A stretch of 64,000 bases of DNA, taken from contig NC_058131.1 in NCBI RefSeq assembly GCF_016433145.1, positions 402,493,933 to 402,557,932 on the forward strand. Reading direction: 5' to 3'. The notes beneath the pieces were generated by a model that made no database searches, had not been told where the DNA came from, and saw only the letters and a list, made by a program, of their open reading frames with translations. Positions 8,983 through 28,883 of this stretch are shown here, in pieces. The number at the start of each line of letters is the position of its first letter. Within the stretch, counting starts at the first letter, position 1. The translations under genes were made by a program, and so were the position numbers. This DNA comes from Gracilinanus agilis (Eukaryota).

Positions 8983-9186
8983 TTCTTTTAAACCCTTACC
9001 TTCCATCTTTGAATCATTACTGTGTATTGGTTCCAAGGCAGAAGAGTGGTAAGGACTAGGTGTGGGGGGGTGTTAAGTGACTTGCACAGGGTCACATAGC
9101 TAGGAAGTATCTGAGGTCAAATTTGAACCCAGGACCTCCAGTCTCTGGGCCTGGCTCTCAATCCACTGAGCCACCCAGCTGCCCCC
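8983..9186 (-). mobile_element. Opossum-type tRNA-derived SINE
   Basis: Reverse complement of the consensus; TSD TAGCAGGTAGATTT. Confidence 0.9.
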
Positions 9187-10044: not shown

Positions 10045-11471
10045 ATGGTAAATGTCCTGTTTCTCATCTTACTGTCCAAAGCTGAGTCCTAATCCTTTTC
10101 ACTATTGATTTGGGGCCAACAACCTAGGTGGAGGTGTAGTGTAGGGCAGGATAACTGGGGGAGGCGGGGAGGAAGGTCAGGCAGAAGGATGGGATGAGAG
10201 GAAAGAGTAAGTGAAAGCAGGTTTAGGTTCTGAGGTCCAACCCGGTCCTAGTATTCCAGCCATTCGCACTTCTCTGGCTCCCCTGTTTCCCCAGCAGTGG
10301 GACCAACCATGAGATAAATCCCTGATATCATCCCCAGGAGCCCTGGCAGAGGTGGCCACTGCTGTTGCTGCTAGCTCCCCTGCTGTTGCTTCCCTCGTCT
10401 GCCTCAGCCTCCTGTGAGCTGGACGAAGAGGGCAATAATTGCTACTGCAACTTTTCCGCTCCGAACCCTGAATGGGATAGAATTGCGATGTGCATTTCCT
10501 CGGTACAGGCGGATATCGATGGGGGCGGCCACAACTTGGACATCTTTTTGCAGAAAGTAATTGCTGACCCGAGCAAAATCTCGGACATACTGAGATCGCT
10601 GCGCCTAAAACGGCTGAGGCTAAGGGGTGCCCAGGTCCCGGCCCCACTTCTGCATCAGCTCCTGAAGGCATTGACCTACACGCGGATTGAAGAGCTGTCC
10701 CTAGTAGATCTGGTGATTTCGATGCCGCCCCTGCTACCTCCGTCATTCAGTGACAATGACCTCAGGCTGAAAGCCCTGCACCTCCACAGAGTGCTGTGGA
10801 CCGGAGAGGGCAACTTACTGGCGACAGTGGGGCCTTGGCTAAAACCTGGACTGAAGGCACTGAGCTTGACTGGTTTAAACCTGAGCTATGTGCCCTGCCC
10901 AGAGTTGGACGCCTTTGGGGAACTGAACTCTCTAGATCTGTCGGACAATCCAGAGATAACAGAGAATGGCTTAACTTCGGCGCTTTGCTTCTCGAAGCTC
11001 CAGGCACTGAAGGATCTGGCACTTCGGAACACCGGCCTCCAGTCCTTGGGGAGAGTGTGCCGGGCTCTGGAGGCGACGGAGACCAATGTGCAGCGACTGG
11101 ACATCAGTTACAACGAGCTGGGAGGGAAACCCTGGCCTCAGTGTACCTGGCCACCCTCCTTGCTCTCGCTCAACCTGTCCCACGCGAATCTGAAGTGTGT
11201 GCCGAAGCCTCTGCCCAAGAAGTTGCAGCAGCTGGACCTAAGCTACAACCTGCTGAGGAAGCAGCCTCAGTTGCCCCAGGTAACCGACTTGATCCTTGAA
11301 GGGAACCCTTTTGCCTACGCCGGTGCCTCAGCCAGACTGCAAAGGGAGCAGCCGACAGAGGACTGCGCAGTTCTTTCTCGCGGGAGCAAGTTCGCAGGCG
11401 CCACGCTAGCCTTCCTGGTCTCTGGGACAGCAGCCTTGGCGCTGCTGCGCTGGACCAGAGAATTCGCCTGA
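10045..11471 (+). CDS. CD14: Monocyte differentiation antigen CD14 (378 aa; exons 10045-10047, 10338-11471)
   Basis: ATG-only first coding exon (AGCCATG|GTAAAT), acceptor CCCCAG|GAG in frame (MEPWQRWPLLLLL...), CELDEE..CYCNFS N-cap, LRRs (LDLSDNP, LDISYN, LNLSHANL, LDLSYNLL) and a hydrophobic GPI-signal-like C-terminus. Same gene architecture as eutherian CD14. Confidence 0.97.
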
Positions 11472-11588
11472 AGGCTTGTGGGGAGCAACTGGGAAGAGGA
11501 AAAGAACATTCAAGTTCCCACCTGACTGACTTGTGATTCCAGGGAATGCAGGGGAACCCTGCCAAGATCTCAACCTCCACCACTTTTC

Positions 11589-11626
11589 ATTAAAAAATAA
11601 AAAATTAATAATAATTGAGAAATAAA
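11589..11626 (+). terminator. CD14 polyadenylation signals
   Basis: ATTAAA 11589-11594, AATAAA 11596-11601 and AATAAA 11621-11626. Confidence 0.7.
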
Positions 11627-12316
11627 ATGTCCGCACGTCTTTTTTCTCTCTTCTCCAGAGATTCTGAAACCCAGTTCGTAACACTGGAATGGGGGGCGGG
11701 GAGGGGCGCGGGGCAGGGAAGTGAGGAAGCAGGAAGAAGGAAAATTGTTTTCACAACTGAGACTGGTTCTTCTAAACAGAAGAGCTCCAGACGAGGTACT
11801 AGTCCTTATGTCTCTCCTCCCCCTAACTGTAAGCTACCTTCCCGGAATCATAAACTCTTAAGACTGTAAGAAACCTTGGAGTTCACCAAGACCAGGGAGT
11901 TCTTATCTTGAAGTCCCTGAACTTAAAAAATTATTTCAATATGGTTTTGCATATTTTTTGTAATGTTACACGTATTTAATTTTATGCATTTCCAACATTA
12001 AAGGGGCATATGAAAAGTGTTTAAAACCCCTGTATCCCTTTCCCTTCCTTTTCTTTAGCTTCACCAGGATGTCAAATCCCAATGAAGGTCTGGTAATTGT
12101 GACCTCACCTCCCTAGAGGAAACTGATGTGTGTGGAATCAATTGACTGTATTGAGAACTTGGAAGCTTGTGGGTGGGCCAAGGGCAGAATTCTGAGAACC
12201 AGACACAGGTGGACTGAAGATAGCCTGGTGGCCTTGGATTGGGGGACAGCATGCCCCGCCCTAAACCACCATATGGGCCATGAATTATTGAGGAGAACCC
12301 TAGAGGCTCCAGAACC

Positions 12317-15300
12317 ATGACAAGTAGTGAGCAGGTAAGGAGAAACTTGCCCTCTGGACCTCCCTGGCTGCTTGGGCTCAGGGCCTAGGCCTCATTATCT
12401 TCTCCTGCTTCAGGCTGAGGCTGCAACAGTGACAGCAATGATAGAAGTGGCATCCATACCAGAGACAGGTGAGGAATTCCACCCAAGAGCAGTTCTGGAG
12501 GGGACCCTGAAGTCAGGTTTCCTGTGTCCTGGACAGGAGAACACAGTAGAAGCCCACAGTCCTGAGTAACCCACCACTCTATTACAGATCATGAAACCTA
12601 CAGCCCCCGATTCCTTATAGAGGGTCCTAGAATGCTCTTGCTAGATCCAGGAGACCCTGAGACTCTGGTACTGTTGGGGTGGGGAAAGATGGGGCAAGGC
12701 ATGAGGAGGATGGAGGAAAATGAGGGTATAAACAGGAATTGACCTTACTGACTTTAGTCTTGCACTTAGGAGCACCAATTCACATTTGACTGAGCCTTAG
12801 GCCCAGAGCATGCCCAGGTAGAATAAGGGGGTAGGTGGGGAGGGTGGTTGACAAGTCTGTGTCTCCTTCTGTCTCATTCTATTTCTCCCCCTTGTATCAT
12901 ACTGTATACTGTCCTAGAGACAACTCTTTTGGTACCTTCCCAAGTTGGAGCATGTTGCTTAGAAGGCATGTGGCAGGGAGGAAAGGGAGGACTGTGATGT
13001 CCCAGACTGAAAGTCTTGGGGTCCGATGGAGTAGGGAGCTAATGTTCCCAGAGAGGTGAGCTCTTCTATATCAATACAGAAAACAGAACAGAAGTTCCTG
13101 GAGAGCATTCGGGCTGTGCTGGGCTCAGTATCCAGAGGTTATAGTGTGTCTGTGCTGATTAGGGGCAGAGAAGCCAAGCAGCCAGATCTGGTTCCTCAGG
13201 TGACGAGCTGGAATTCACTTTGCCCTACCTACCATACAGTGTGTGTGTGGATGGGGGGGGGGGCCGAGGGGTGGTGTCAGAGGGACTTTTCTCCTCATCC
13301 TCATTCCACCCCTACCCTCTCTAATATTAATTTCTAGCTCCTGGCAATGCTGTTTGAGGAGATTCAACCTGCAGAATCTGCCTTTCAACCCTCCCTCAGG
13401 ACCCTAAGTCTAGTGCAGGTGACAAATCTTGAAAGGGATTTGCAGGGACTGGGCAGCCCTGGAGAGTGCTTTTCAGGATTTGGAAGCTTTTGATAGGTTC
13501 CACACAAACATATCCCATGCACTTCCCACGACTTCTCATTGCTTTTAGCTCAGTTCTAGTGGGAAGGGTCAAGACTTATTATCTGGAGCAGGGGACCTGA
13601 GCTTGCTGGAGGTGTACCCACTGGGTCTGTGAGTATGCAATTTTTTTTTCTTTATTCCAGTGACAAATTTACACATAAGTTTTCCAAGGTTACATGATTC
13701 ATGGAATTGACAAACAATTCCACTGGGTTATTCATGTATTCTCACTCAAAACCCATTTCCATATTATTCATTTTTATAAGATCAAAACTCTAAATCATAT
13801 ACCCAAACAAACAAGTGATAACTCATATGCTTTCTTCTGCATTTCTACTGTAAGTATGCTACTTTGCCCAGGATAACGAATATTTTCTTCTAGCACTTCC
13901 TCACTTCCCTATTCCACCCCAAGCACCATTCCCACAAAAGCCAGACTGGAGGGCCCTGTTCTGGAGTCCAGTAGCTTGTAATTTTCTGGGAGAAGAGGAA
14001 GCAGAAAAAGCACTATCTTCCCTCATGGACCTTTGATCTCTCAGAGAGCCAGCTGCCCTCTTCAGGGTTTGTCTGTCTATAGACTAGGGTTACCTGCTCA
14101 TTATGTTTTTATGCCTGGGATTCAAGGCTTTTGAAGATCCTGTGGCAGAGGTCCATATTTCAAGATCTTTTCAAGCCTAGGTTTCCACTTTTTTCCCAGG
14201 GTAGTGGAAGGAGCTAGTGAAGCAGAGGTCCTTGACTCCAAATCTGGCTGCCAACTTTACCTCAAGGCAATGGAGGGCTTGGACAGGTATGTGAGTCTGT
14301 GATCCCTGGTAGAAAGAATGAGGGAAGGAGAAAGAAACTCAGAGGGCAACCTAAGGAACCCTGCCCAGAGTTATAACCATCTTCATCCCCAGGGCCTGCT
14401 CCCTTCTTACTGTGACATTTTCCTGCCTGGAGCCCAGCACCATCAAGAGGCCCTGGGTCAGAAGCCTGTGTCGAGGCTCACTGAGAGTCCTGCAGCTCCC
14501 AGAAGCTCCGTGAGTCTAGCTTGGGGTGGGATCCAGGGCAGCAGTTTGAGGGTCCTATAAAATAAGGGGTGGTTAGTTCCCCATACCCAGCAAAAGAACA
14601 CAATGAGCAGGGTACCCTAGTCATACAGACAAAGAAACCCTGAAGAGGGGAGCTGTGCAGAAGACAGTTCCCATAACAAAGACCTGCATTGTGCCTGGCC
14701 TTAGCTCTCACTCCTTGTAGGGACTGCCCTTTATTGCTAGCACTGGCAGGGAAAACCTCCAAGGCCCATGTGGGCTCATTGCTTTGGACTGTGACTCAGT
14801 TACTCTTCGGGAATAGTTACAGTAGCCTGCTGCTCTACTTGGATCCCCGAGGTATGAGGTTGGGGAGGGAGGGAAGGGAAAAGAAGAAGTGAAGGGAGAA
14901 TTAATTCTTTTGGGGGAGGGTCCCTAGAAAGCTCTGCTCCCCAAGCTTCCAAATACCAAGGTTCTCAAAGAAGCTTCTTATCCAGGCTTCTCACTGAAAA
15001 GTGGGTGTTCCATACCCAGTTCCAGTTCAGTGGGAAGGAGGAGCCCCATGTGACTCTTAGCAGGAGAAGTTGGGAGGGGTGGACAAAATTGTTCTTTGAC
15101 TACACCAAAAGTCCATCCCACTCCTCATGAATTGGTCCCATTGCCTGCCTGTTCTCCCTGGCAGTCACCCCTTTGGGGCTGCTCCTGGCCTCACTATCAG
15201 GGGCTAAAAGAGCCCAGGACCCAGCTCAGTCAAAGCAGGTTTCTCCCATACTGTGGGATGCTTCAGAAGAAATTCAGGCTCGGCGTGCAGCTGTTCAGGC

Positions 15301-18300
15301 CCTGCGCTCTGGGCTTTCTGGAGCCACTCTGCAGGAGAGTCAGCTTACCCAGCTAAGCCTGGTGCTCAGGGAATTGAAGGTGAGACAGAACTGGTTCTGG
15401 TACCTGGGTACTATCCTCCCACCTAGGGCAAAAGAGGCTCTGGAAACTATTGACTGAACTTGCTATCTGCAGGTATTGAAAAACCAAAGCCGGTACTGTG
15501 AGACTATGATGCTCAAGGGACCTGGAGCCTCTGCACCTGGGCTTCCAAACATGCAGGTATGTGGGTGCCCAATTCCCTAGACCAGTGATGGCAAACCTTT
15601 TAGAACATTTTAGGGACCTGTACCCCACCCTGCCTGTGTTTGGAGGCAGGGCAGGACTCCATCTGTGTGTGTGTGTGTGTGTGTTGCTGCACATGCCCAT
15701 AGAGAGGTCTCTGCATGCCATTTTTGACACATGTGCCATAGGTTCACCATCATGACCCTAGACCTTGAGATTAGCATTTTGTCACCACCCATAGAAGATG
15801 GCTCTGGGGCTAATTTTAAAGCATCCTTTCTCAGTATATTTGATTTCAAATTTGCACTTAGGGTGCAAAAAGGGACATTTTGTTATAACTTTATATAATT
15901 GGCCTATTTTAAGGTGAGGCTCCTTGGTGTAGTGGATAGAGTACTGGACTAGCAGTCTAGAACATCTGGGTTTAAATCCTACCTCTTAAAATTACCAGTT
16001 GGGCTATGATGCTTAAGACACTTAACATCTCTGAGCCTCTGACAAATCTGTGTCAGTTATAGGCAGGTTGAGGTCTATCTCCATTGTATACTTTAAATAG
16101 AAGAAAATTCTGTTTTCCACAACAAGAGGTACTTTTATGATGAAAAGTCCTCTGTGTTGAATCAGATGTTGGGGCAGCTAGGTGACTCAGTGGATTGAGA
16201 GCCAGGAGGTCCTAAGTTCAAATCTGACCTCAAATACTTCCTAGCTCTGTGACTTTGAGCAAGTCACTTAACCCCCATTGCCTAGCCTGGTGATGGCAAA
16301 TCTATTACACGTGACACGTGTAGCCATTTTTGATGACACACGGCTGCGTACAGAGAAGTATGGGGCCGCATGCCAAGGATGAAACATTTGCTATAGTGTA
16401 GTATAGACACTCTGTGCACTATAGATGAAAATTCTACCTATATTAATTTATCTATTTTGGTTTATTAAATACAGTTATATATCATAATTATAAATTTTTG
16501 TTATTTAAACTATAAATATCACAAAATTATTGTATTTTTCTCGAAGTGACACACCACCTGAGTTATGCTTGGTTTTTTAGCAAATTTTGACATACCAAGC
16601 TCAAAAGGTTGCCCATCACTGGCCTACCCCTTATCATTCTTTTGTCTTGGAAACAATACACAGTATTAATTCTAAAAAAGAAAGTTTAGGAAAAAAACAA
16701 CAAAAACCAGTGAATTGGAGGTCAAAGGCTCCAGTGAACAGTAATAATTTTGAAACCTTTGAGAGGAAAGGAAGAGAATGAGCAGAAGTACAAATACCTT
16801 GCTAAAGCTTTCCTATTTCTCCATCTTCCTAGAGAGATATCTCCCTTATATGTTCCTTTCTGGGTTTATAAGTTGGCCTCTTCTAGCCCTGCTGGTACCT
16901 CAAATAGTATCTCTTACATATAGAGTGATGACAGAGGAGAGACAGACCTCAGACTCAATCCCAATTCCTATTTATTAATTTAAAACCCTTACCTTCTGTC
17001 TTAGAATTGATACTAAGTATTGGTTCCAAGGCAGAAGAGCTGGAATTAAGTGACTTGCCCAATGTCACACAATTAAGAAGTTTCTGAGATCATATTTGAA
17101 CCCAGGACCTCCAGTCTTTAAGCTTGGCTCTCTATCCACTGACCCACCTATTTGCCCCTCTTCCTATTTATTTTGATACCTTGTTAATCCTGGTACCTAT
17201 TTAGCTTGAAAGAAGGAAAATATGTATTCTAAGTACCCTTACAATCTGGCATCTGATCTCACAATATTACTCTTTGCTTTTTAAATTTAAGTAAATTTTT
17301 TCAAGTAACAAAAATCCACCTTCTCTCCCTTCTCACCTGCTTCCTATCCCCACAGGAAAAAAAAAAGAAAGAAAGAAAACAAAACCCTCATAATAAATTG
17401 GCATAGTTGAGCAAAACAAATTCCTGTATTGGCCAAGCCTAAAAAACCTGTTGCAATTTGGGCTCTTTCTCTCACCAGGAAGTGGGCAGCTCTATTGCAT
17501 CATGAGTGTTTGAATCAGGCCAAGCCATCTCCTTTGTTGATCAGCATTCTTAAAACATTCAAAGATGTTTGTCTTTATAATATTGTTGTCATAAGAATCT
17601 TTTCAAGGTTACTGATTACATTTTAATGATATCTATAGTTGCTTAAAAATAACATAAAAGAATGAAATTAAAACCCAACCTTTCAAGGAGGAGGCTTTGT
17701 TGTATTATAACATTTCTCTCTAGGTGCTAGAATCAAAGGAGACCTTTTCTCCCATTTTCCAGAAGCACCCCCAAGGTGAGTTCAGGCCCTGTGGCCCAGA
17801 CACTATCTTCTTGGAGTTCCTCTTAGTTTGTCTATCTTCCCCCAGAATAAAAATATTTCTCTTTGGCCGCATGCACTTCAGAAACTCTGGGCCTGGGGAA
17901 GAAGTTTCTCCTATCAGCAGCACCAAGAAACTACCCTCTTGAGGGCTCCAAGAAAAAGGTAAAGCTTCACCCATTCCTATAGAGAGTACGTGGGGATTTC
18001 CCAGGGAACAGTTTTCTGTGGGTAAAATTAGGTTAAAATGAACACTATTGGAAATATGAAAGAAGGAAAGGAGTCACAAAAGGGCAGGTTGAATTATAGA
18101 AAATTTCTGAGAGGGAAAGCCCCACTGTTTTATCTTGGTGATAATGGTGACAATCAGGTATGATTTATGCTTTTCTTGTATTTTAGGGTTTTAGATTTGG
18201 AAAGGACCTTAGAGATCATCTAGTTCAATCTCATTATTCTCATAGATGAGGAAATTAAGGATAGTAGAGAGTAAGTTATTTCCTTGAGAGTTCATAGATA

Positions 18301-20182
18301 ATAAGTAGCAGAGCAGACATTTAAATTCAGGACCTCTGGGACAGCTAGGTAGGGCAGTGGATAGAGAGCCATACCTGGAGTGGGGAGGACCTGGGTTCAA
18401 ATCTAGCCTCAGATACTTCCTGCTGTGTAACCCTGAGCAAGTCACTTAACACCAATTATCTAGCTCTTCTATCTTGAAACTAAAACTTGTATCAATTCTA
18501 AGAGAGAAAGTAAGAGTTAAAAAAAATAATTGATACTAAGAAGGATTTTAAAAAAATTTAGGTCCTCTGACTCCAAATCCAATGATCTGATCATGATCCC
18601 TTTTTTTAGAAAGAGTCGGTAGAGTTACTTCCTATCTCTCTTAGACTTAGCTGATTTTACTGCTCAGGAATTCACTGCCAGTAGTGCTGAAACCTCTAAC
18701 TTTGAGGTGGGGGCAATGGGAATTGGGAGCTTTGTTTGAGGCAAAACCAATGGCCTCGGTGGGGAAAGTAGGCCTTATTTCTAAGGCAGCAGTTTTTTAA
18801 AATTAAATTTAAATTTAAATTAATTTATTTTAACAATTTTTAAAAGTTCCAAATTCTCTTCTCACCCCTTCTCCACCCATTTGAGAAGGCAAAAAATATG
18901 AAACCCATTTTACATGTGAAGTCATGCAAAACATATTTCTATATTAGTAAGGCAAGAGTTATTAAATGTTTGTTGTCATGGACCCATTTGGTAATCTAGT
19001 AAAACTTAATACCACTATGGCTTGTTGCCTATCACTGAAGGAAATGCTGGATTTCAGATAACAGTAAATGAAAATAAATATCTAATTTCTTTCCCCATCC
19101 AAGTTCAATAGATTCATAAAATCTAATGGGACTCCAGGTTAATAACCCTTGCCTCTAAGGGAGAGGAAAATGGAACTTGGCCCAATGGAAAAAAAAAACA
19201 AAACAGAATGTATGTAAGTCCTCCTTGTTGGTGTCTATTCTCTTAGCCCCCTGACGTAGCACTGCAGTTTATGTTAGCACGGGCCCATAGGCAGCTGCTC
19301 CAGGAGCATCACCGATCCCAGGTCCAAGAGGAACTGAGCTGCTTGAGGCAAGACAAGAAAATAGCAACAGATCAGGTTAGTCCCAGATATCTAGGGGGGA
19401 AAAATAAAAGAGACCAAGACTAGTGCTGAAGCTAAAGAGTAGGCTTCTTCTGTCTCAGCAAATACCGATGTTCATTAGGCCCCAGACCTATCTGCTGAGA
19501 ATCTGAGCTGGAGGCAGGATCATGAAGCACTGGCCTTACAAGTGGAGGCTCTGAGATTGGAGCGAGATGCAGCTGAACAGGACCTAGAGGCCCTGTACAA
19601 GCTGTATGTCCAAGGAGCCCGGACACAGACTTGCCACATCTTGCAGGTCAGTAGTAAACAAAGAATGGTGGCAGAGGAATGATGAAGCTCCAGCTTAATA
19701 ACTCAAGTTAGTGGCAGATGGCCACTCAAGACCCAGCTAAAGAAATAGATGTCTGAATTCCTCTAACCAACAATCCATTAAAAGCACAGGTGTTCCAGGC
19801 TTGTCAGGGGCTGTGGAAGGAGCGGGCTACTGCCAGAGAGTTACATCATCGAATCCTGTTGGCTGGAGTCTTACAGGATGCCATCTCTCTGGCCACACAG
19901 AACCAACAGCTCCAAGTCCAGAATGAGCAGCTCAAGAAGGGTGAGGATTATGAGAAGGAGAAGTGTAGGAAAGAAGTGGGGTTCAAATGACAATAGAAAT
20001 AGGGACTGTTTCACTAATCTCAACCCATGAGTATATCCCAGGGCTTTGTCCTGAAGTACAAGGGATTACTATTAGGAGAGATGAGATTGGGGTCTGGCAA
20101 CCTTGGTCCTCCAACAGGCCTTCAGTGATTCTGTGTTCCATGTCTCCCAACAGAAATCACAGAGAGGAGGGAAAAAGTTTAA
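12317..20182 (+). CDS. Uncharacterised 18-exon gene: degenerate kinesin-motor-like domain plus coiled coils (574 codons including stop; one in-frame TGA at 12791-12793, so possibly a recent pseudogene)
   Basis: Exons 12317-12334, 12414-12468, 12588-12667, 12770-12817, 13080-13199, 13338-13418, 13549-13628, 14200-14286, 14393-14509, 14721-14851, 15165-15379, 15473-15556, 17724-17775, 17882-17958, 19247-19375, 19479-19646, 19790-19940, 20154-20182. All 17 introns are GT-AG with matching phases (1722 nt total). Kinesin-like blocks occur in canonical order: HQFTFD*ALGPE, FLESIRAVLGSVSRGYSVSVLIRG, QDLL, VVEGASEAEV, SLLTVTFS, TQLLFGNSYSSLLLYLDP. Confidence 0.8.
13643..13860 (-). mobile_element. LINE-1 3' end fragment
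   Basis: T-rich start followed by ...CAATTCCACTGGGTT..., the same marsupial L1 3' UTR motif as in 3490-3620. Confidence 0.75.
15583..15755. mobile_element. hAT/Charlie MITE (OposCharlie1-like termini)
   Basis: Left TIR CAGTGATGGCAAACCT, right ...CATAGGTTCACCATCATG, 8-bp TSD CCCTAGAC on both sides. Confidence 0.85.
16171..16700 (+). mobile_element. SINE interrupted by a hAT MITE (MITE 16288-16621)
   Basis: SINE head at 16171-16287 and tail resuming at about 16630. MITE termini TGGTGATGGCAAATCT and AGGTTGCCCATCACTG, TSD GCCTAGCC/GCCTACCC. Confidence 0.8.
16978..17159 (-). mobile_element. Opossum-type SINE
   Basis: Reverse-complement consensus AAACCCTTACCTTCTGTCTTAGAAT...CCACCTATTTGCCCC. Confidence 0.85.
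18190..18590. mobile_element. MIR/CORE-SINE (-) with a nested opossum SINE (+, about 18338-18520)
   Basis: CORE motif GATGAGGAAATTAAGG...; nested GGGACAGCTAGGTAGGGCAGTGG head. Confidence 0.65.
18952..19150. mobile_element. Ancient hAT-Charlie (Charlie4-like) non-autonomous element; related copies at about 32265-32450 and 41712-41930
   Basis: Shared motif TGTCATGGACCC..TTGG(C/T)A..CT(A/G)GT(G/A)AA..C in all three copies, with GTTA(T/A)TAAC-type termini. Family name is from memory. Confidence 0.55.
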
Positions 20183-21974
20183 GCTCTGGCAGTCTGCCCA
20201 AACACATTTTCCTCAAAGTAAAGGCATTCCAATCCAGGTCTGCCTTGGCTAACAGACATGGCCCCACAGTCATACCTGTACTGCAAGAGTCAAATCAAAA
20301 GCAAGCTTTTAGTAGCCACAGCAAGAATCTTTCTTATTTAGTGGTACCTAGCCTAAATTCGGTCCTACTTCTGGAGAGTATTTACTGCCACCTAGCTGGA
20401 AAGCTGTGCTTTTTTATTTCCAACTCCCTAGAATTTGGAGGAAAATGTGTAATATTACAGAACCTTGGAATATAGAGAGGCCCAGTCAGCTGGCACTTGC
20501 TCTGTCCTGGCAAACTCCCTTCTTTGTATTCCTAATCTTGATTATTCAATTTTAGCATCTATTGAGAGGAAAACTGCCCACTCCTGCTACATACACCTTG
20601 CCCCTATTGATTGTAACCTTTCCCCTACACAATCGCTTTCTTCTTCTTCACTGTCTTTCCATTGTGCCTCTGGAAATCCTCAAGTATTATTAACAAACAT
20701 CTCCTCTTCCTAGATCTCTCCAGTTTATTATTTTTTCCTTTTTATGGGTGCACTAAAACTTGACTCTCCAGACACTACATCCCTGGTGGCTGACACTTCT
20801 CCCTCTGGCCTACTAACTAAAGACCACCCTGTGCTAAGAGAAATAGTTCTCATATTGCTTGATTTTCACTGCCACTTTCAGATCCTCTGGCAGCCAATGC
20901 CATACAACCACTTCTATATAACTGCGCAGATCCTTGTGGTTGCCTCTGGGTCCCTCATCCTCCTTTCACAAGGAATGCAGTGTCTGGTTCATGGTTTTTC
21001 CTCTGTACCTCAGTTTGGGGTTTAGATTTAGATGTATAAGTGACTTCAGAAACTATCTAATGAGGGTATGAAAGAAAAGAATGCTGACTGGAGTTGGAAG
21101 ACCTTCTGCCTCTGATGCTTGCTATCTGAGTGACCATGGGCAAACCAGTGATCTGTTTCTTCATCTGTTGGAATAAGATCCCATGACCTTGGTCCAACTT
21201 CTCTATTTAGAGTAAAGATGAGGAAAATAGAGCTTAAGCACATTAAGTGATTTGTCTCAGGTCACACAAGATAGTAAATATCAGACCCCAAATAAGAACC
21301 CAAGTCCTCTTGACTCTAGAACACTCTCTTTTTACTGACACATGACCATCTTTATCCTTGAGATGCATCTTCAAACACTCTGGCTTCCATTACATATTTT
21401 TAAAAATTTCCTTACTGATACATTTTGTCTGGACAAATTAATAATTTCCCAGTAAATAACTTTCCTATAGTATCTTTTTAAAAATGTTTGTTGGTTACAT
21501 TAAAATTCCCAGGTATCTCTGCTCACCTCCCCCACTTCCCACACCACAGAATGCATCACCCAGCTCCAAAAATGTGTGTATAAATATGTCTTTTGTGTTT
21601 CCAATTATTGGTTTTTTTCCCTGGATGTGACATTCAAAAATTATCCTTCAAATATTAAATCTATAGTTGTATATAATGTTCTCTCGGTTCTACTGGTTTC
21701 TCTCTTCATAATTTCATGTTGGTCTTTCCAGATTAAAAAAAATTAACCTGTTCATCATTTCTTATGGTGCAGTAGTATTTCATCACAATCATATATCATC
21801 GCCTATCTTGCCATAAAAAGTTTAATCAAAACCTTCTAATTGTGACTGACAGAGCATACAACTTTCTACTCTTAAAATTTCTCTTTTCTTAATAGAAAGG
21901 AAGCATTTTAACCACAGACCACAGCCTGTGGTTTCAACAGTTCGGCCACAGAGATCATCATGTCTTAGATCTTT

Positions 21975-22157
21975 TTTTTTTTAAATCATTACCTTCTGTT
22001 TTAGAATCCATACCTTGAAAAGGCTCCAAGGTAAGAGTCAGGCAATGAGGTTAAGTAACTTGCCCAGGGTCACACAGTTAGGAAGTGTCTGAGGCCAGGT
22101 TTTGAACCTAGGACCCCCCTAGACTTGGCTCTCAATCCACTGAGCCACCTAGCAGCC
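21975..22157 (-). mobile_element. Opossum-type SINE
   Basis: Reverse-complement consensus with a poly-T head. Confidence 0.85.
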
Positions 22158-23631
22158 TTTTCATGCTTTAGATCTTAATCTCACCCATATTTGGGTCCCC
22201 TCCAAGATCTTCAACCACTATATCCTCTAATAATAACCTCCTGTCTTATCTCTCCCTCTGTTGGATTCTTCCTAAACCTATTTTTTATATTCACTTTGAT
22301 CTACAAATCCTACCCCAAGTCTGTTCTACTCTAGTCTCACTTTTCTCCCTTCCCAGGTTGAATGGTAGTTGACCAGTCTAGCCAAATCTTGTTCGCTACC
22401 CAAAATCCTTTGCTCCCTTGACCTAGGTCCATTCAGGCCTGTTAATATCTTCTATCCTGAGATCACCTCATTATCTGCAGCCCACTGGGTCCACATTCAT
22501 GGTATCTAAACTAGCTTTGTCATTTCATTTTTTTACTTTTTTGTAATCCTTTTACTCTTCCTGGAGTGTCTCTATGTCCCTCTCAGAGTTAATGCAAATT
22601 TCATCTTTCTTCAAGTCTCTTATTTCTCTCTCAGCAGGACTTCAATTCTTTTCTAACTGAAGAAAAAAAGCAAAAATCCAACCAATCAAACAAGAACCTC
22701 TCATCTTTCTTATTCCAAGCTTCCTCCCGTTTTTGAATAATAACAGCTCATATGTATAACAGCTCTAAAGGTTTACAAAGTGCTTTACACACATTTTTTC
22801 ATTTTATACTTAACAATCCTGTGAGGTCAGTGCTACTATTATCCTTTTTATAGATGAAGAAAGTGAGTCGGAGAGAAAGTAAGTAACTTAGCTATAGTCA
22901 GACACCTAGTGAATGTCTTCTCTCCTTGCACCATGCATGAGACAGCCTACCTTTGGGCCAACGAGTATCTCTAGAATAGCTAGGTAGAGGCTGCTAGGGG
23001 ACAAAGGACAGAGCACTGAGTTTTGAGTCAGGAAGATCTGGGTTCAAATTTGACCTTCCATAATTCTTGTGACACTGGGAAAGTCACTTAAACCTATCTG
23101 CCTCAGTTTCCTCAACTGTAAAGTGAGGAGAGTAACAGTACAACATAGGTTATTGTGAAGATTAAATGAGATATTGGTAAAGTACTTAGCACAGTGCATG
23201 AGGCATAGCAGTTCTTGTTCCCTATCCCACCTTACCCCAATACAGATGTTTGATTTACATATCTAGCCCTCATTTTTCTTCTGAGCCCAAGTCCCATACC
23301 TGACAGGCATTTCCATCTAGTTTGAACCAGAGGAATCTCAGAATCAACATGGCTAAAACTGAACTTATTTATCTTTTCCTAATATCTGGTGAGAGCATTG
23401 CCCTTCAAGTCCCAGGTATACAATCTCAGCCACAATTAACTCTTCACTCTCTCTCTCCTCCATATTAATCACTCTCTGGCCAATTCTTTCACTGTCTTGC
23501 CTCTGGTCCCTTTCTCTATTCTCACTTGGTCATCAGCTTAGTTCAGGCCTTATCACCTTACTATTGCAGTAGCTTCTTAATTAGACCACTTGTCTCCAGT
23601 GTCCTCTCATCCTTCCTTTAAACAGCAGTCA

Positions 23632-23975: not shown

Positions 23976-23997
23976 ATCACCAAACTGAAATATATAT

Positions 23998-24412
23998 ATT
24001 TTAAACCCTTACCTTCCATCTTAAAATCAATATCGTATTTAAGTTCCAAAGCAAAAGAGCAGTAGGACTAGACAATGGGGGTTAAGGGACTTGCCCAGAG
24101 TCACACAGCTGGGAAGTGTCTGAGGCCATATTTGAACTCAGGACCTCCCATTCCTAGGTCTGGCTCTCAATCCACTGAGTCACCCAGCTGTCCCCACTAA
24201 ACTGATACTTTTTTTTTTTAAACCCTTACTTTATGTCTTAGAGTCAATACTGTGTATTGTTTCCAAGGTAGAAGAGTGGTAAGGGTAGGCAATGGGGGTC
24301 AAGTGACTTGCTCAGGGTCACACAACTTGGAAGTGTCTGAGGTCAGATTTGAACCTAGGACCTCCTGTCTCTAGGCCTGGCTCTCAATCCACTGAGCTAC
24401 CCAGCTGCCCCC
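23998..24412 (-). mobile_element. Two tandem opossum-type SINEs
   Basis: Copies at about 23998-24196 and 24208-24412, both reverse complement of the consensus. Confidence 0.85.
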
Positions 24413-25987
24413 TAAACTGATATTCTTAAAGCACATTATTATTATTATTATTATTTTTTGTTTAAGAAACATTGGTGCCTCCTTCTTTCCTAAGGACAAA
24501 TACCAACTCCTTTGGCACTTAAAGTTCCATACAACTTGATTCCAGTTTATAGTTCCAGCCTGATTTCCTATTACTTCCTAGTATGTACCTTACATTCCAG
24601 CCAAACTGGCTTCCTTGCTATTCCCTGCAAAACATTTCATTTCCTGCCTGCATGTCTTTGAAAAAGGTGTGGGCCCTGCCTGAAATGCTTATCCTCCTTA
24701 CCTCTACCTCTCGGAGTTCTACTTTCCTTCAAGGAGAAGTTACTTCAGATGTGTACTTGCTGCAGCCACCAATGGAACGTGAGACCCTTAAGGAAAGGGA
24801 CAATTTGTATCTTTGATTCTCTAAGTGCCTCGAAAATTATTTTTTGGTCTATACTTTTAATTTCTCTGGTACAGGGAATTCCGGTGAGTAAACTTCCTGT
24901 ACCAAAGCAAAATGGCATCCTATAACTGAGGCAGCCAGATGCTTAATATTCACTGACAGATACTTAATTGAAAATGAAAAATAGGTCATGGTTAGGGAAC
25001 AGGGAATTTTCTGTAAAGGGGGTAGAAGATATGAGAAATGATGTGGAAGTGTCATGAAAAAGTTAAACAAGTGACTATCAGGGAGATGGAGATGAGAGAA
25101 CAGACAATTTTGAGGTTACAATTCTCTTACTGGGAAGTCGGCAATTCCCTCAAAGAGAAATGTGGAAAAAATGAAAGTGCTGGTTGTAGGGGTGAGCATG
25201 GCAGCAGTCAAGATAATCAGCTATTTTAGACATTCTGAATCTGCAGTGTCAACTAGATATCCAGGAGCGGTTTGGCAGATAAATGGAAAAAAATACTATT
25301 AGCACTTGAGAGATTAGGGATCTAGAGATATAGATTTTTGGGAATCTTATGCAAAAAGATAATTGAACCCATGAGAACTGAAGAATTTGACAAGGGAGAA
25401 AGTGTAGAGAGGAGGGTCTTGGGATAATATATATCCATGTTAAAAAAGCCAGGAGATGGATGATGATTCAGCTAAGGAACATGGACAGAAGCCAATGGAT
25501 TACCCAGGAGATGAATATCAACAATATTAAAAGTGACAGAAAGATCAGAGGCCTAGAATAGGGAAAAGGGCATTTAATTCAGTCATTAAGTGACTGGCAA
25601 TTTCTGAGGCAATTGTTTCATAGCAGGTGACTAGAGTCAGAAGCCATATTGCAGTGGGTTGAGGAGAATGAGGGGTAAATTAAGCTGTTGGAAATTTTAA
25701 GTTTGGGGTTTCTTCCCCCCCCCCCACTGGAATATATTGCAACGAAAGGGCCTGGGTTTGGACTTCTGCTCTACTTCCTCATTCTTGTTTTAGAATTCAA
25801 TGAAAACACAAATCATTCTGGCCTCATGGAGACTATAACATGGCACCAACATTAACCTACCTCTTAAGGTGTATGTGAGACTCTCCAGGCTCAACTTGGC
25901 ATCAAAGAGCTCAATTAACACCAGGGGTTTACAGAGGACACAACACATCATGGAAGGTGGTAGGGAAATCCCTACTTCCAGAAACAC

Positions 25988-27375: not shown

Positions 27376-28338
27376 CTACCGGCCTCCATAGTAGAGATGT
27401 ACAGCCAGACCAATAAGCAGGAGAGCCAAGAAGAAGGCAGCCGTGAGCTGGAGGTGAAGCAGGGTGGCTGAGAGCACAGCATTGACAATCAGTGAAGAGG
27501 AGACGACAAAGAGACGGGTGATACTGCTCCCATGCTTCATGATGGCTGACATAAGCAATCCATTAAGGGCCTGACTCAGAACCACCAGCCCTGCCCAGGC
27601 TGAGAAACCCTCTAGGAGCCCAGGGCCTGGCCCACCTCCCACATAGAGCCCCAAGTTCATAAGTACCCCAAAGGAGTACAAAAACAGGTTCTGCAAAGCC
27701 AAGGGCAGACGCTGCCTCTTCATGAGCAGCTCAGTGTAGACTGAGGAGAGGCCAGAGATGAGGCAGTAAAGCAAGAGCAGCAACAGACCCAGGGGAGTCA
27801 CATGGAGGGGCATGGCTGCTGCTGGGGATGGTGGGAGGAGGCCCTGCGGATCCTGGAGGCCTGCAGCAGCATAGCAGGCTCCAGCACCAGTCAGTAGCAG
27901 AAGTGCCAGCCCCTGCCTGGCAGAAAGACGGCGATTCAGGCAGAGGCAGTAAAGGAGAGCTGTGCTGCCAATTTTGAGGTTGCTCATCACTTGGTAGGTG
28001 CTTGGGTCCATGTACCGCTGCAGGTGAATGACGAGGTTGTTGTTGGCACCATAGAGCAGTGCAGAAAGTGCAAAAGGGGCAGCCTGGCGCCAAGGCAGAG
28101 TGTCCCATAGTCTTGGCTGCCTCCTGGCCATCAAAGAGAATGCAGATAGCAGTAATTTGGTCAGTTCGGTCCAAAGCACAGCTGAAGAGGGACGGAAGGG
28201 GACATGGCCATCTATTCGACACAAGGCCAGCAGTGGGGCATGGGCACCATACATGGTTGTGGACAAGAGGAGCATAAGCACCCATCGGGCCTGGCTCGGG
28301 CGCCCTATGCCCGGTATGCCCCCTTCCTCCACATTCAT
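27376..28338 (-). CDS. SLC35A4: Probable UDP-sugar transporter SLC35A4, main ORF (320 aa, single exon)
   Basis: MNVEEGGIPGIGRPSQARWVLMLLLST...PFRPSSAV..TELTKLLL...DPSTYQVMSNLKIGSTA... is a multi-TM nucleotide-sugar transporter. The ORF track starts at GTG 28344; the first ATG is 28338. Confidence 0.97.
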   Translation of the reverse strand: MNVEEGGIPGIGRPSQARWVLMLLLSTTMYGAHAPLLALCRIDGHVPFRPSSAVLWTELTKLLLSAFSLMARRQPRLWDTLPWRQAAPFALSALLYGANNNLVIHLQRYMDPSTYQVMSNLKIGSTALLYCLCLNRRLSARQGLALLLLTGAGACYAAAGLQDPQGLLPPSPAAAMPLHVTPLGLLLLLLYCLISGLSSVYTELLMKRQRLPLALQNLFLYSFGVLMNLGLYVGGGPGPGLLEGFSAWAGLVVLSQALNGLLMSAIMKHGSSITRLFVVSSSLIVNAVLSATLLHLQLTAAFFLALLLIGLAVHLYYGGR

Positions 28339-28883
28339 CCCCACTCTACCAACTGAGGCCTTAGGTGGGTAAGTAATGGCAAAAGTAAGAGTGGGGGGAA
28401 AGTTTATAGTCCATCAAGTAAAACTGAATGATGGAGCCAGCTCCTAGGAAGGCAAATTCTAGATACATTATCAAATTAACAAGAAACTAGGTAGGCTATA
28501 GGTTAGAGCCATAAGTAGAGGAAATAGGGACTTATCTACCCCTTCCTTAAAAAAAAAAGAAAGAAGCAAAGAAGGAAAGAAAGAAGGAAAAAGAAAGAAA
28601 GAAAAAAGAGAGAGACAATACTCTAGAAGCACAGATGCTGGAAGACAAAAAGAAGGATATGGGTAGAAGACAGGGAGAAAACATCTGTGGTCTAGAATAG
28701 CTGAGGCAACTGAAAATAAGTAGCTAGGGAGGTTAGAGATGGGGCAAGACAGCTAGCCTTCCTTGATGACCCTATATAGTCAGTCCTGCTGCCTATCCAT
28801 GCTGACCCAGATTCCAAGGCTTGTCCTCAGAGGGCAGTGGGTTTTCCTGAGGAGGCTTTGGAGGGAAGACTGCTGAGAGTGTA

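What the first reader, a model, noticed from the sequence alone, without database searches (positions are those of the whole stretch)
12317..20182. Hidden 18-exon kinesin-like gene between CD14 and SLC35A4
Seen in sequence: 18 short exons (18-215 nt) join through GT-AG introns with matching phases into one 574-codon frame, which the ORF track cannot show. The N-terminal 300 or so codons reproduce the order of kinesin motor elements: beta-strand TVTAMIEV, then FTFD.ALGPE (cf. FTFDxVFGP), FLESIRAVLGSVSRGYSVSVLIRG (cf. PLVESVLEGYNxTIFAYG), LVPQLLAMLFEEI (cf. IIPRxxxxLF), QDLL (cf. RDLL), VVEGASEAEV (cf. YVxGLTExxV), SLLTVTF (cf. HSIFTI), RGSLRVL (cf. SKLxLVD) and TQLLFGNSYSSLLLYLDP (cf. QDSLGGNSKTxMIAxISP). 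Heptad-rich segments follow (EEIQARRAAVQALR, HEALALQVEALRLERDAAEQDLEAL, TQNQQLQVQNEQLKK). Inference: an uncharacterised kinesin-superfamily derivative. From memory and unverified, mouse has the uncharacterised E230025N22Rik at the syntenic position and human has no well-known coding gene there.
Basis: partly seen in the sequence, partly recalled or inferred. Interest (0 to 1): 0.92.

Follow-up and report, generated by a model that had tools for sequence, protein, structure and literature searches.

The report
Dead-motor kinesin-like gene beside CD14
This is a real but unstudied mammalian gene, the counterpart of mouse E230025N22Rik, whose front half descends from a kinesin motor that has lost its ATP-binding parts; in this genome its fourth exon carries a stop codon.

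Summary
The 18-exon model is correct. Every boundary is GT-AG, the phases match, and it gives 573 codons plus TAA. It aligns end to end with annotated proteins of other marsupials, and all 18 exons and their splice sites are kept in Monodelphis, koala and Dromiciops. The frame is not open, though: codon 59 in exon 4 (12791-12793) is TGA, where relatives have CGA, AGA or CAA.

The gene sits between CD14 and SLC35A4 in five marsupials and beside Slc35a4 in rat. Orthologues occur throughout therian mammals, and one sequence is possibly from a monotreme. Nearly all are named "uncharacterized", and the murid ones are E230025N22Rik. I saw no hominoid model.

Kinesin ancestry rests on several weak but concordant tests:
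- an orthologue profile hits only kinesin motors in the PDB (E 5.6e-4);
- Pfam matches to kinesin families fall below threshold;
- Foldseek's top rows are mostly kinesins;
- language-model neighbours are all kinesin clusters.

The P-loop is deleted and both switch motifs are replaced. AlphaFold models were poor, so the fold itself is unproven. dN/dS is 0.3-0.5, which indicates purifying selection.

Exon 4 is 48 nt in phase 0-0, and models in other species omit it, so skipping could bypass the stop. I obtained no read evidence.

The parts
12317..12334 (+). exon 1 (ATG; 6 codons)
   Evidence: Conserved in Monodelphis, koala and Dromiciops. Same start as P0137 and P0139.
12414..12468 (+). exon 2 (strand corresponding to kinesin beta1)
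   Evidence: Predicted strand in the AF2 model. Aligned to the start of kinesin motors.
12588..12667 (+). exon 3
12770..12817 (+). exon 4 (48 nt, phase 0-0; FTFD motif; holds the stop)
   Evidence: Only 83% identical to Monodelphis, against 94.6% for all exons. Omitted from NCBI models of Notamacropus, Petaurus and Trichosurus; the exon is intact in the two of those genomes that I read, Notamacropus and Trichosurus.
12791..12793 (+). in-frame TGA, codon 59
   Evidence: The orthologous codon is CGA in Dromiciops and Notamacropus, AGA in koala, and CAA in Monodelphis and Trichosurus. Eutherian consensus is Arg.
13080..13199 (+). exon 5 (alpha1, GY motif, and the place where the P-loop is missing)
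   Evidence: HMMER places an 11-residue gap opposite GQTGAGKTYTM of KIFC3.
13338..13418 (+). exon 6 (alpha2 'LF' and beta4-like TLSLVQ)
   Evidence: There is a 3-nt in-frame length difference from Monodelphis.
13549..13628 (+). exon 7 (DLL motif)
14200..14286 (+). exon 8
   Evidence: Its 28 codons are identical in three of the four marsupials (window, Monodelphis, Dromiciops); koala differs at two residues.
14393..14509 (+). exon 9 (117 nt, phase 2-2; positions of switch I and switch II, both replaced)
   Evidence: Predicted strands 191-200 and 215-223. Missing from several species' protein models. The motif assignment is by eye.
14721..14851 (+). exon 10 (alpha4/alpha5/beta8-like; most conserved part of the domain)
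15165..15379 (+). exon 11 (alpha6-like end of the domain plus neck helices)
   Evidence: (this peptide found the orthologues)
15473..15556 (+). exon 12
17724..17775 (+). exon 13 (poorly conserved linker)
17882..17958 (+). exon 14 (poorly conserved linker)
   Evidence: The donor is GC instead of GT in Monodelphis and koala.
19247..19375 (+). exon 15 (conserved helical tail begins)
19479..19646 (+). exon 16 (conserved helical tail)
19790..19940 (+). exon 17 (conserved helical tail)
20154..20182 (+). exon 18 with TAA
   Evidence: Same C-terminus as the Sminthopsis, Dromiciops and Petaurus proteins.

Best explanation
The locus is this marsupial's orthologue of mouse E230025N22Rik. That gene is conserved throughout therian mammals (one further sequence may be monotreme) and has never been studied. 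It lies head to tail downstream of CD14 and tail to tail with SLC35A4. The encoded protein of about 570 aa starts with a domain of about 290 aa descended from a kinesin motor. In that domain the P-loop has been deleted, and the switch I, switch II and RxRP positions carry unrelated residues. The domain therefore cannot bind or hydrolyse ATP as a kinesin does (inferred from the motifs). After it come neck-like helices, a poorly conserved linker and a strongly conserved helical tail. The most likely role is as a non-motor scaffold or dimer, with the conserved core and tail as binding surfaces (inferred, untested). In this genome a CpG transition (CGA to TGA) has placed a stop in exon 4. The rest of the gene shows no decay, exon 4 is a 48-nt phase 0-0 exon, and models in other species omit it. 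I therefore think the gene is still in use here. The options are an exon-4-skipped mRNA (about 35%), a TGA that is a polymorphism or assembly error (about 25%), or a pseudogene only just formed (about 35%).
For: Gene model and orthology:
- The exon structure is reproduced. All 18 exons and their splice sites are kept in three other marsupials.
- The model aligns end to end with annotated proteins.
- Synteny CD14 - gene - SLC35A4 is seen in Monodelphis, with CD14 immediately upstream in Dromiciops, koala, Trichosurus and Notamacropus. The rat orthologue lies next to Slc35a4 and Apbb3.
- There are 192 mammalian hits, including entries named 'Riken cDNA E230025N22 gene'.

Selection:
- dN/dS is 0.29-0.50 with upper confidence limits of 0.82 or less.
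- Exons are 94.6% identical to Monodelphis and introns 90.4%. The intron rate predicts 21 indel events in the CDS, and one in-frame event is observed.
- The window branch has 23 nonsynonymous and 11 synonymous changes, against 31 and 16 on the Monodelphis branch.

Kinesin descent:
- A profile of 25 orthologues hits only kinesin motors among 177,635 PDB sequences. The best are KIFC3 (E 5.6e-4) and kinesin-8 (E 1.3e-3), both in register, with a gap exactly at the P-loop.
- PF00225 and PF16796 give sub-threshold hits at E 1e-4 to 0.1 on profile positions 34-183.
- About 45 of Foldseek's top 50 rows are kinesin motors.
- All 100 named language-model neighbours are kinesin clusters, with a top score of 0.90.
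- The order of predicted strands and helices matches beta1 to alpha6 of a kinesin motor.

Exon 4:
- It is 48 nt in phase 0-0 and shows neutral-like divergence in didelphids.
- It is omitted from models in species where the exon itself is intact.
Against: - No kinesin match reaches a curated threshold: the best PF00225 score is about 17-19 bits against a cut-off of 29.3.
- Both AlphaFold models are poor (pLDDT 52 and 50).
- Foldseek TM-scores are about 0.19, and VIA-align found no kinesin superposition.
- Similarity in the C-terminal half of the domain rests on alignment by eye.
- There is no transcript evidence for this species. Read laying failed, and the RNA-run shares of 0.05-0.11 are uninformative.
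- Branch-specific dN/dS on the window branch (about 0.67) is not significantly below 1.
- The TGA, taken at face value, truncates the protein after 58 residues.
Confidence: 0.72

Rival explanations
1. The copy in this species is a very young unitary pseudogene. The TGA is real and fixed, exon 4 is constitutively included, and the mRNA is truncated or degraded. The rest of the gene has simply not had time to decay.
For: There is an in-frame TGA at codon 59. The gene evolves fast: dN/dS is about 0.5 here and above 1 in hares according to PMC6065068. It seems to have been lost or eroded in some primates. dN/dS on the window branch, about 0.67, is not significantly below 1. No protein from this genome appeared among the homologue hits.
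Against: There is only one lesion. All 34 splice dinucleotides are intact, there is no frameshift and no second stop. The intron rate predicts about 10 indel events on this branch if it were neutral throughout. The ratio of nonsynonymous to synonymous changes is the same as on the Monodelphis branch. The stop sits in the one exon that can be skipped in frame.
Confidence: 0.33
2. The TGA is an assembly or sequencing error, or a heterozygous or rare allele of the sequenced animal, and the species has an ordinary intact gene.
For: The change is a single C-to-T at a CpG codon (CGA in the outgroups). This is the commonest type of polymorphism. Nothing else in the gene is damaged.
Against: There is no direct evidence.
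Confidence: 0.25
3. The N-terminal domain is not derived from a kinesin. The resemblance is chance or convergence in an alpha/beta domain, and the gene is an unrelated mammal-specific coiled-coil protein.
For: All kinesin matches are below the curated thresholds. Full-length orthologues gave no Pfam hit at E<=1 in the first scan. The 3D models do not superpose on kinesin. All four nucleotide motifs are absent.
Against: Four methods of different kinds return kinesin and essentially nothing else. The alignments are in register over about 170 residues and include FxFD, GY(N), LF and DLL. The deletion falls exactly at the P-loop. UniProt's automatic rules also named two orthologues as kinesin motor domain proteins.
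Confidence: 0.1

Closest known systems
Mouse E230025N22Rik and its mammalian orthologues (for example Monodelphis LOC100026344, Sminthopsis LOC141556791, rat rCG62907)
   Same: It is the same gene. The alignment is collinear over the full length: 87% identity to Monodelphis, 74% to Sminthopsis and 47-52% to eutherians. The 18-exon structure is the same. So is the position next to CD14 and SLC35A4.
   Different: Of the five marsupial genomic loci read at this codon, only this copy has a stop in exon 4. None of the family has a described function. The literature mentions are gene lists, plus one report of dN/dS above 1 in hares.
Kinesin motor domain proteins (Pfam PF00225; best sequence matches KIFC3 5wde and Plasmodium kinesin-8 7z2b)
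   Same: The order of core elements is shared, with recognisable FxFD, GY(N), alpha2 'LF' and DLL motifs. The domain is N-terminal and is followed by helical neck and stalk regions. Profile-to-sequence similarity is significant only to kinesins.
   Different: The P-loop GQTxxGKT is deleted, a gap of about 11 residues. SSRSH, DLAGSE and RxRP are replaced, and the PYRDSKLT microtubule-contact motif is unrecognisable. Scores are below Pfam's threshold. No subfamily can be assigned.
Known catalytically inactive kinesins: kinesin-11 (KIF26A/KIF26B, VAB-8, Smy1p) and KIF7/Costal2 (from my own knowledge, not tested here)
   Same: These are also kinesin-derived proteins thought to act without a normal ATPase cycle, as scaffolds or regulators.
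   Different: They still score as full kinesin motor domains and keep a P-loop-like segment and microtubule binding. Here the P-loop is physically absent and the domain is far more eroded. No specific relationship to kinesin-11 was seen: one KIF26-type cluster appeared only at rank 58.

Membership tests
Kinesin superfamily (motor domain, Pfam PF00225) | Match to the motor-domain profile at or above the curated score | tested here: not met
   The best PF00225 E-value is 7.3e-4 among 78 orthologues (10 of 78 match at E<=10), and the bit scores I saw were 11.5-17 against a cut-off of 29.3. PF16796 reaches at most 22.5 bits against 27. Single exon peptides of the window gave no hit.
Kinesin superfamily (motor domain, Pfam PF00225) | Detectable homology to kinesin motors, in register | tested here: met
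   With the orthologue profile against PDB sequences, all 11 hits are kinesins. The best E-value is 5.6e-4, and profile positions 12-181 align to chain positions 5-190. A second profile gave 6 hits, all kinesins. All language-model neighbours are kinesin clusters.
Kinesin superfamily (motor domain, Pfam PF00225) | P-loop / Walker A GQTxxGK(S/T) | tested here: not met
   HMMER opens a gap of about 11 residues opposite GQTGAGKTYTM. The window reads ...LIRGREAKQPDLVPQ.... The same is true in all 25 aligned orthologues.
Kinesin superfamily (motor domain, Pfam PF00225) | Switch I (NxxSSRSH) and switch II (DxxGxE) | tested here: not met
   The strands at the corresponding positions read RACSLLTVTF and SLRVLQLPEAP. 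The positional assignment is by eye plus predicted secondary structure.
Kinesin superfamily (motor domain, Pfam PF00225) | Three-dimensional kinesin fold | tested here: inconclusive
   The two AF2 models had pLDDT 52 and 50 and pTM 0.54 and 0.45. Foldseek gave mostly kinesins, but at E 4e-3 to 0.18 and TM about 0.19. VIA-align found no kinesin superposition.
Kinesin superfamily (motor domain, Pfam PF00225) | Microtubule-stimulated ATPase and microtubule binding | not testable with these tools
   This needs biochemistry.
E230025N22Rik orthologue group | Full-length collinear similarity and shared exon structure | tested here: met
E230025N22Rik orthologue group | Conserved position between CD14 and SLC35A4 | tested here: met
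   In the window, an LRR ORF lies at 10365-11471 (+) and a nucleotide-sugar transporter ORF at 27376-28344 (-). Both flanks are shown in Monodelphis. The CD14 side is shown in four other marsupials. The Slc35a4 side is shown in rat.
E230025N22Rik orthologue group | Uninterrupted reading frame | tested here: not met
   There is a TGA at 12791-12793. It is absent from the five other marsupial loci examined.

The most novel reading that the evidence does not exclude
Mammals carry an unrecognised extra lineage of the kinesin superfamily. It would be a pseudo-motor without a P-loop, kept under purifying selection across therian mammals (possibly also monotremes) for a nucleotide-independent role. 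Its core exons (4 and 9) would be optional in the mRNA. It would have been lost or eroded in hominoids. This opossum would tolerate a nonsense codon because exon 4 is spliced out.
Probability: 0.3. Interest if true: 0.65.

Novelty: new member of a known kind. Interest (0 to 1): 0.48.

Why it matters
Inventories of mammalian kinesins (45 KIF genes, from my own knowledge) do not include this gene, and my two literature searches found no paper that discusses it as a kinesin relative. It would be an extreme example of a pseudoenzyme, because the whole P-loop is gone yet the core and tail stay under selection. It also offers a natural test of what a kinesin fold can do without nucleotide. Its fast evolution, its tight linkage to CD14 and its apparent absence from hominoid annotations make it a candidate for lineage-specific biology. 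For this genome the practical point is annotation: the locus should be called an orthologue with an exon-4 nonsense codon, not a newly discovered gene.

Tried and rejected
- **Single exon peptides against Pfam and the PDB** gave nothing relevant. The pieces are too short.
- **The spliced protein itself** could not be handed to the search tools. It has no reference and contains a stop, so I analysed intact orthologues by id and compared the model with them in scripts.
I therefore have no junction or allele evidence.
- **RNA-run shares** of 0.05-0.11 belong to a different organism label from the DNA holder. They are about what exon 31-mers shared with Monodelphis would give (0.06-0.09). They cannot separate spliced RNA from pre-mRNA.
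- **Two AlphaFold runs**, with marsupial and seal targets and 78 and 112 sequences, both gave low confidence. VIA-align matched only a helical hairpin.
- **Selenocysteine recoding of the TGA** is rejected. Orthologues have Arg or Gln at this codon, not Cys or Sec, and Rfam finds no SECIS or any other RNA family in 11400-23500.
- **A crude heptad test** did not confirm the C-terminal coiled coils.
- **The kinesin subfamily of origin and any non-mammalian orthologues** could not be addressed. The hit lists fill up with mammalian orthologues, and I had no kinesin alignment for hhalign.


Full report
**Observation**

I re-derived the exon model from the raw sequence. The result is eighteen exons between 12317 and 20182. 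Every intron is GT...AG and the phases are compatible. The one discrepancy is that the frame is not open. The window holds no N.

The flanking ORFs are an LRR protein at 10365-11471 (+) and a nucleotide-sugar transporter at 27376-28344 (-). These fit CD14 and SLC35A4. CD14-side polyadenylation signals lie at about 11590-11625, only about 700 nt upstream of the ATG, and the start region is CpG-poor.

**Is it a gene?**

Single exon peptides hit nothing in Pfam or the PDB. The 71-aa exon-11 peptide, searched against 1.84 billion representatives, found 17 proteins. They include a 605-aa protein at 92% identity and a Sminthopsis protein at 77%.

Follow-up searches gave 192 mammalian hits, almost all 'uncharacterized protein LOC...'. 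They also gave nine marsupial proteins from Monodelphis, koala, Sminthopsis, Dromiciops, Notamacropus, Petaurus, Macrotis and Trichosurus.

The window's model aligns from first to last residue with Sminthopsis isoform X2 (575 aa) at 73.7% identity, and with Monodelphis at 87%. The window is therefore not Monodelphis itself but a fairly close relative. The two loci are collinear at 86-89% nucleotide identity.

All 18 exons and their AG/GT boundaries are present at the orthologous loci of Monodelphis, koala and Dromiciops. There are two exceptions: GC donors at exon 14 in Monodelphis and koala, and a 1-nt shorter exon 14 plus a partly mapped exon 17 in Dromiciops. Only the window has an internal stop.

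Gene order is conserved. CD14 - gene - SLC35A4 is seen in Monodelphis. CD14 lies immediately upstream in Dromiciops, koala, Trichosurus and Notamacropus. The rat orthologue (rCG62907) lies beside Slc35a4 and a PID-domain gene.

One old, GC-rich sequence (P0009) is 47% identical and may be monotreme. I could not verify its source.

**Selection**

Pairwise dN/dS among the four marsupial coding sequences is 0.29-0.50. The bootstrap upper limits are 0.40-0.82. This indicates a fast-evolving but constrained gene.

Against Monodelphis, exons are 94.6% identical and short introns 90.4%. The introns carry 12.3 indel events per kb. At that rate the CDS should hold about 21 events, but it holds one, which is 3 nt and in frame.

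I polarised the substitutions with koala and Dromiciops as outgroups. The window branch has 23 nonsynonymous and 11 synonymous changes, and the Monodelphis branch has 31 and 16. There is no extra relaxation in the window lineage. The TGA is therefore either very recent or tolerated.

**The stop codon**

The orthologous codon is CGA in Dromiciops and Notamacropus, AGA in koala, and CAA in Monodelphis and Trichosurus. It is Arg in the eutherian consensus. The window's TGA is therefore a CpG transition at a hypermutable codon.

Exon 4 is 48 nt in phase 0-0, so skipping it keeps the frame and gives 557 codons. It is the least conserved exon between the two didelphids, at 83% identity. That is below the intron level, and most of the changes are nonsynonymous.

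NCBI models of Notamacropus, Petaurus and Trichosurus leave exon 4 out, as do several eutherian models. Yet the exon and its splice sites are intact in Notamacropus and Trichosurus, the two of those genomes that I read. Exon 9 (117 nt, phase 2-2) is likewise absent from a number of models.

Selenocysteine recoding is rejected. The relatives have Arg or Gln at this position, and Rfam finds no SECIS.

I could not examine reads. The RNA runs that 'hold' the stretch belong to a second organism label and hold only 0.05-0.11 of the words. That is about what conserved exon 31-mers shared with Monodelphis would supply.

**Is it kinesin-derived?**

Full-length orthologues gave no Pfam hit at E<=1 in a first scan. 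Four different approaches then converged.

1. An HMM of 25 orthologues searched against 177,635 PDB sequences returned 11 hits at E<=10, all of them kinesin motors.
   - The hits were KIFC3 (5.6e-4), kinesin-8 (1.3e-3), KIF13B, kinesin heavy chain and KIF1A.
   - Profile positions 12-181 aligned to motor residues 5-190.
   - A gap of about 11 residues fell exactly opposite GQTGAGKTYTM.
   - A 78-sequence profile again hit only kinesins, though more weakly.
2. Scanning members one by one, 10 of 78 match PF00225 (best E 7.3e-4). Marsupial proteins with exon 4 match PF16796 at E 1e-4 to 2e-2 and PF00225 at 3e-3 to 0.15, on profile positions 34-183. All are below the curated cut-offs.
3. Foldseek with the AF2 model found no hit at E<=1e-3, but about 45 of the top 50 rows are kinesin motor structures.
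4. A language-model feature search placed all 100 named neighbours in kinesin clusters, with a top score of 0.90. The tool's own notes class that score as a lead only.

UniProt's automatic naming of two cetacean orthologues as 'Kinesin motor domain-containing protein' agrees. The predicted order of strands and helices matches beta1 to alpha6 of a motor domain.

Several results count against this. Both AF2 models are poor (pLDDT 52 and 50). TM-scores are about 0.19, and VIA-align superposes only a C-terminal helical hairpin. The 3D fold is therefore unproven. The motif matches in the second half of the domain (switch I, switch II, alpha4-alpha5-beta8) rest on alignment by eye.

I put kinesin descent at about 0.85-0.9.

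**What it probably does**

The P-loop is physically deleted. Unrelated residues fill the places of RxRP, SSRSH and DLAGSE in every orthologue aligned. A kinesin-type ATPase cycle is excluded by inference.

Conservation is highest in three places:
- the structural core, blocks 81-180 and 241-340;
- the segment around residues 421-440;
- the tail from about residue 480 on.

The linker at 361-420 is poorly conserved. The likeliest working model is a non-motor scaffold that uses a remodelled kinesin core and a helical, probably dimerising, tail as binding surfaces. This is inference only.

The literature offers only gene-list mentions, low expression in mouse uterine epithelium, and dN/dS above 1 in hares. 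A search for 'pseudokinesin' terms found nothing relevant.

**Distribution**

Orthologue models exist in marsupials and across eutherians. Among primates they are found in lemurs, New World monkeys and Old World monkeys. The Old World monkey models are often truncated. No hominoid protein appeared among the listed hits to a macaque query.

**Verdict**

The gene is not new as an annotation. It is an uncharacterised LOC in over 100 genomes, and some entries are already auto-tagged as kinesin-like. It is, however, undescribed in the literature I could search.

I rate it a new member of a known kind (catalytically dead kinesin relatives), of moderate interest.

Whether this species still uses the gene is open: exon-4 skipping about 35%, polymorphism or assembly error about 25%, fresh pseudogene about 35%.

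Noticed in passing
window 9006-9185, 16170-16287, 16969-17158, 18338-18526, 21972-22157, 23990-24420: Copies of one interspersed repeat of about 180-200 nt, probably a SINE. Each matches several places in the Monodelphis locus at 70-91% identity. Three of the copies lie in introns 12 and 14 of the gene.
   Followed up: no
window 15665-15690 and 13245-13262: A (GT)n microsatellite in intron 12 and a G10 homopolymer in intron 5. Either could explain why the DNA run X12 holds only 0.96 of the words of 12300-15600.
   Followed up: no
L001 10001-17428 (Monodelphis LOC100026344, P0137) and P0001: The public models of the closest annotated relative look partly wrong. P0137 reads through the exon 13 donor into intron sequence, giving 656 aa. 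The older P0001 and koala P0138 use a different exon 17 frame and end in an unrelated tail. The 18-exon structure gives a clean 572-codon frame in Monodelphis.
   Followed up: partly
P0090 (Oryctolagus cuniculus): The rabbit orthologue is named 'plectin' in NCBI and UniRef, apparently a mis-annotation of a coiled-coil protein.
   Followed up: no
window 11589-11626 to 12317: The polyadenylation signals after the CD14 ORF lie only about 700 nt upstream of the kinesin-like gene's ATG. The intervening sequence is CpG-poor, so the two genes are packed head to tail and there is no CpG-island promoter.
   Followed up: partly
L001 26043-27428 (Monodelphis): A called gene with Pfam DUF4535 lies just beyond SLC35A4 on the minus strand. 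I take it, from my own knowledge, to be the SLC35A4 upstream-ORF microprotein. The corresponding window region past 28344 was not examined.
   Followed up: no
exon 9, window 14393-14509: This 117-nt phase 2-2 exon covers the predicted beta6-beta7 strands. It is absent from many species' protein models, including Trichosurus, Pteropus, Equus, Talpa, rabbit, aardvark and P0009. That suggests alternative splicing that removes core strands, or systematic prediction gaps.
   Followed up: partly
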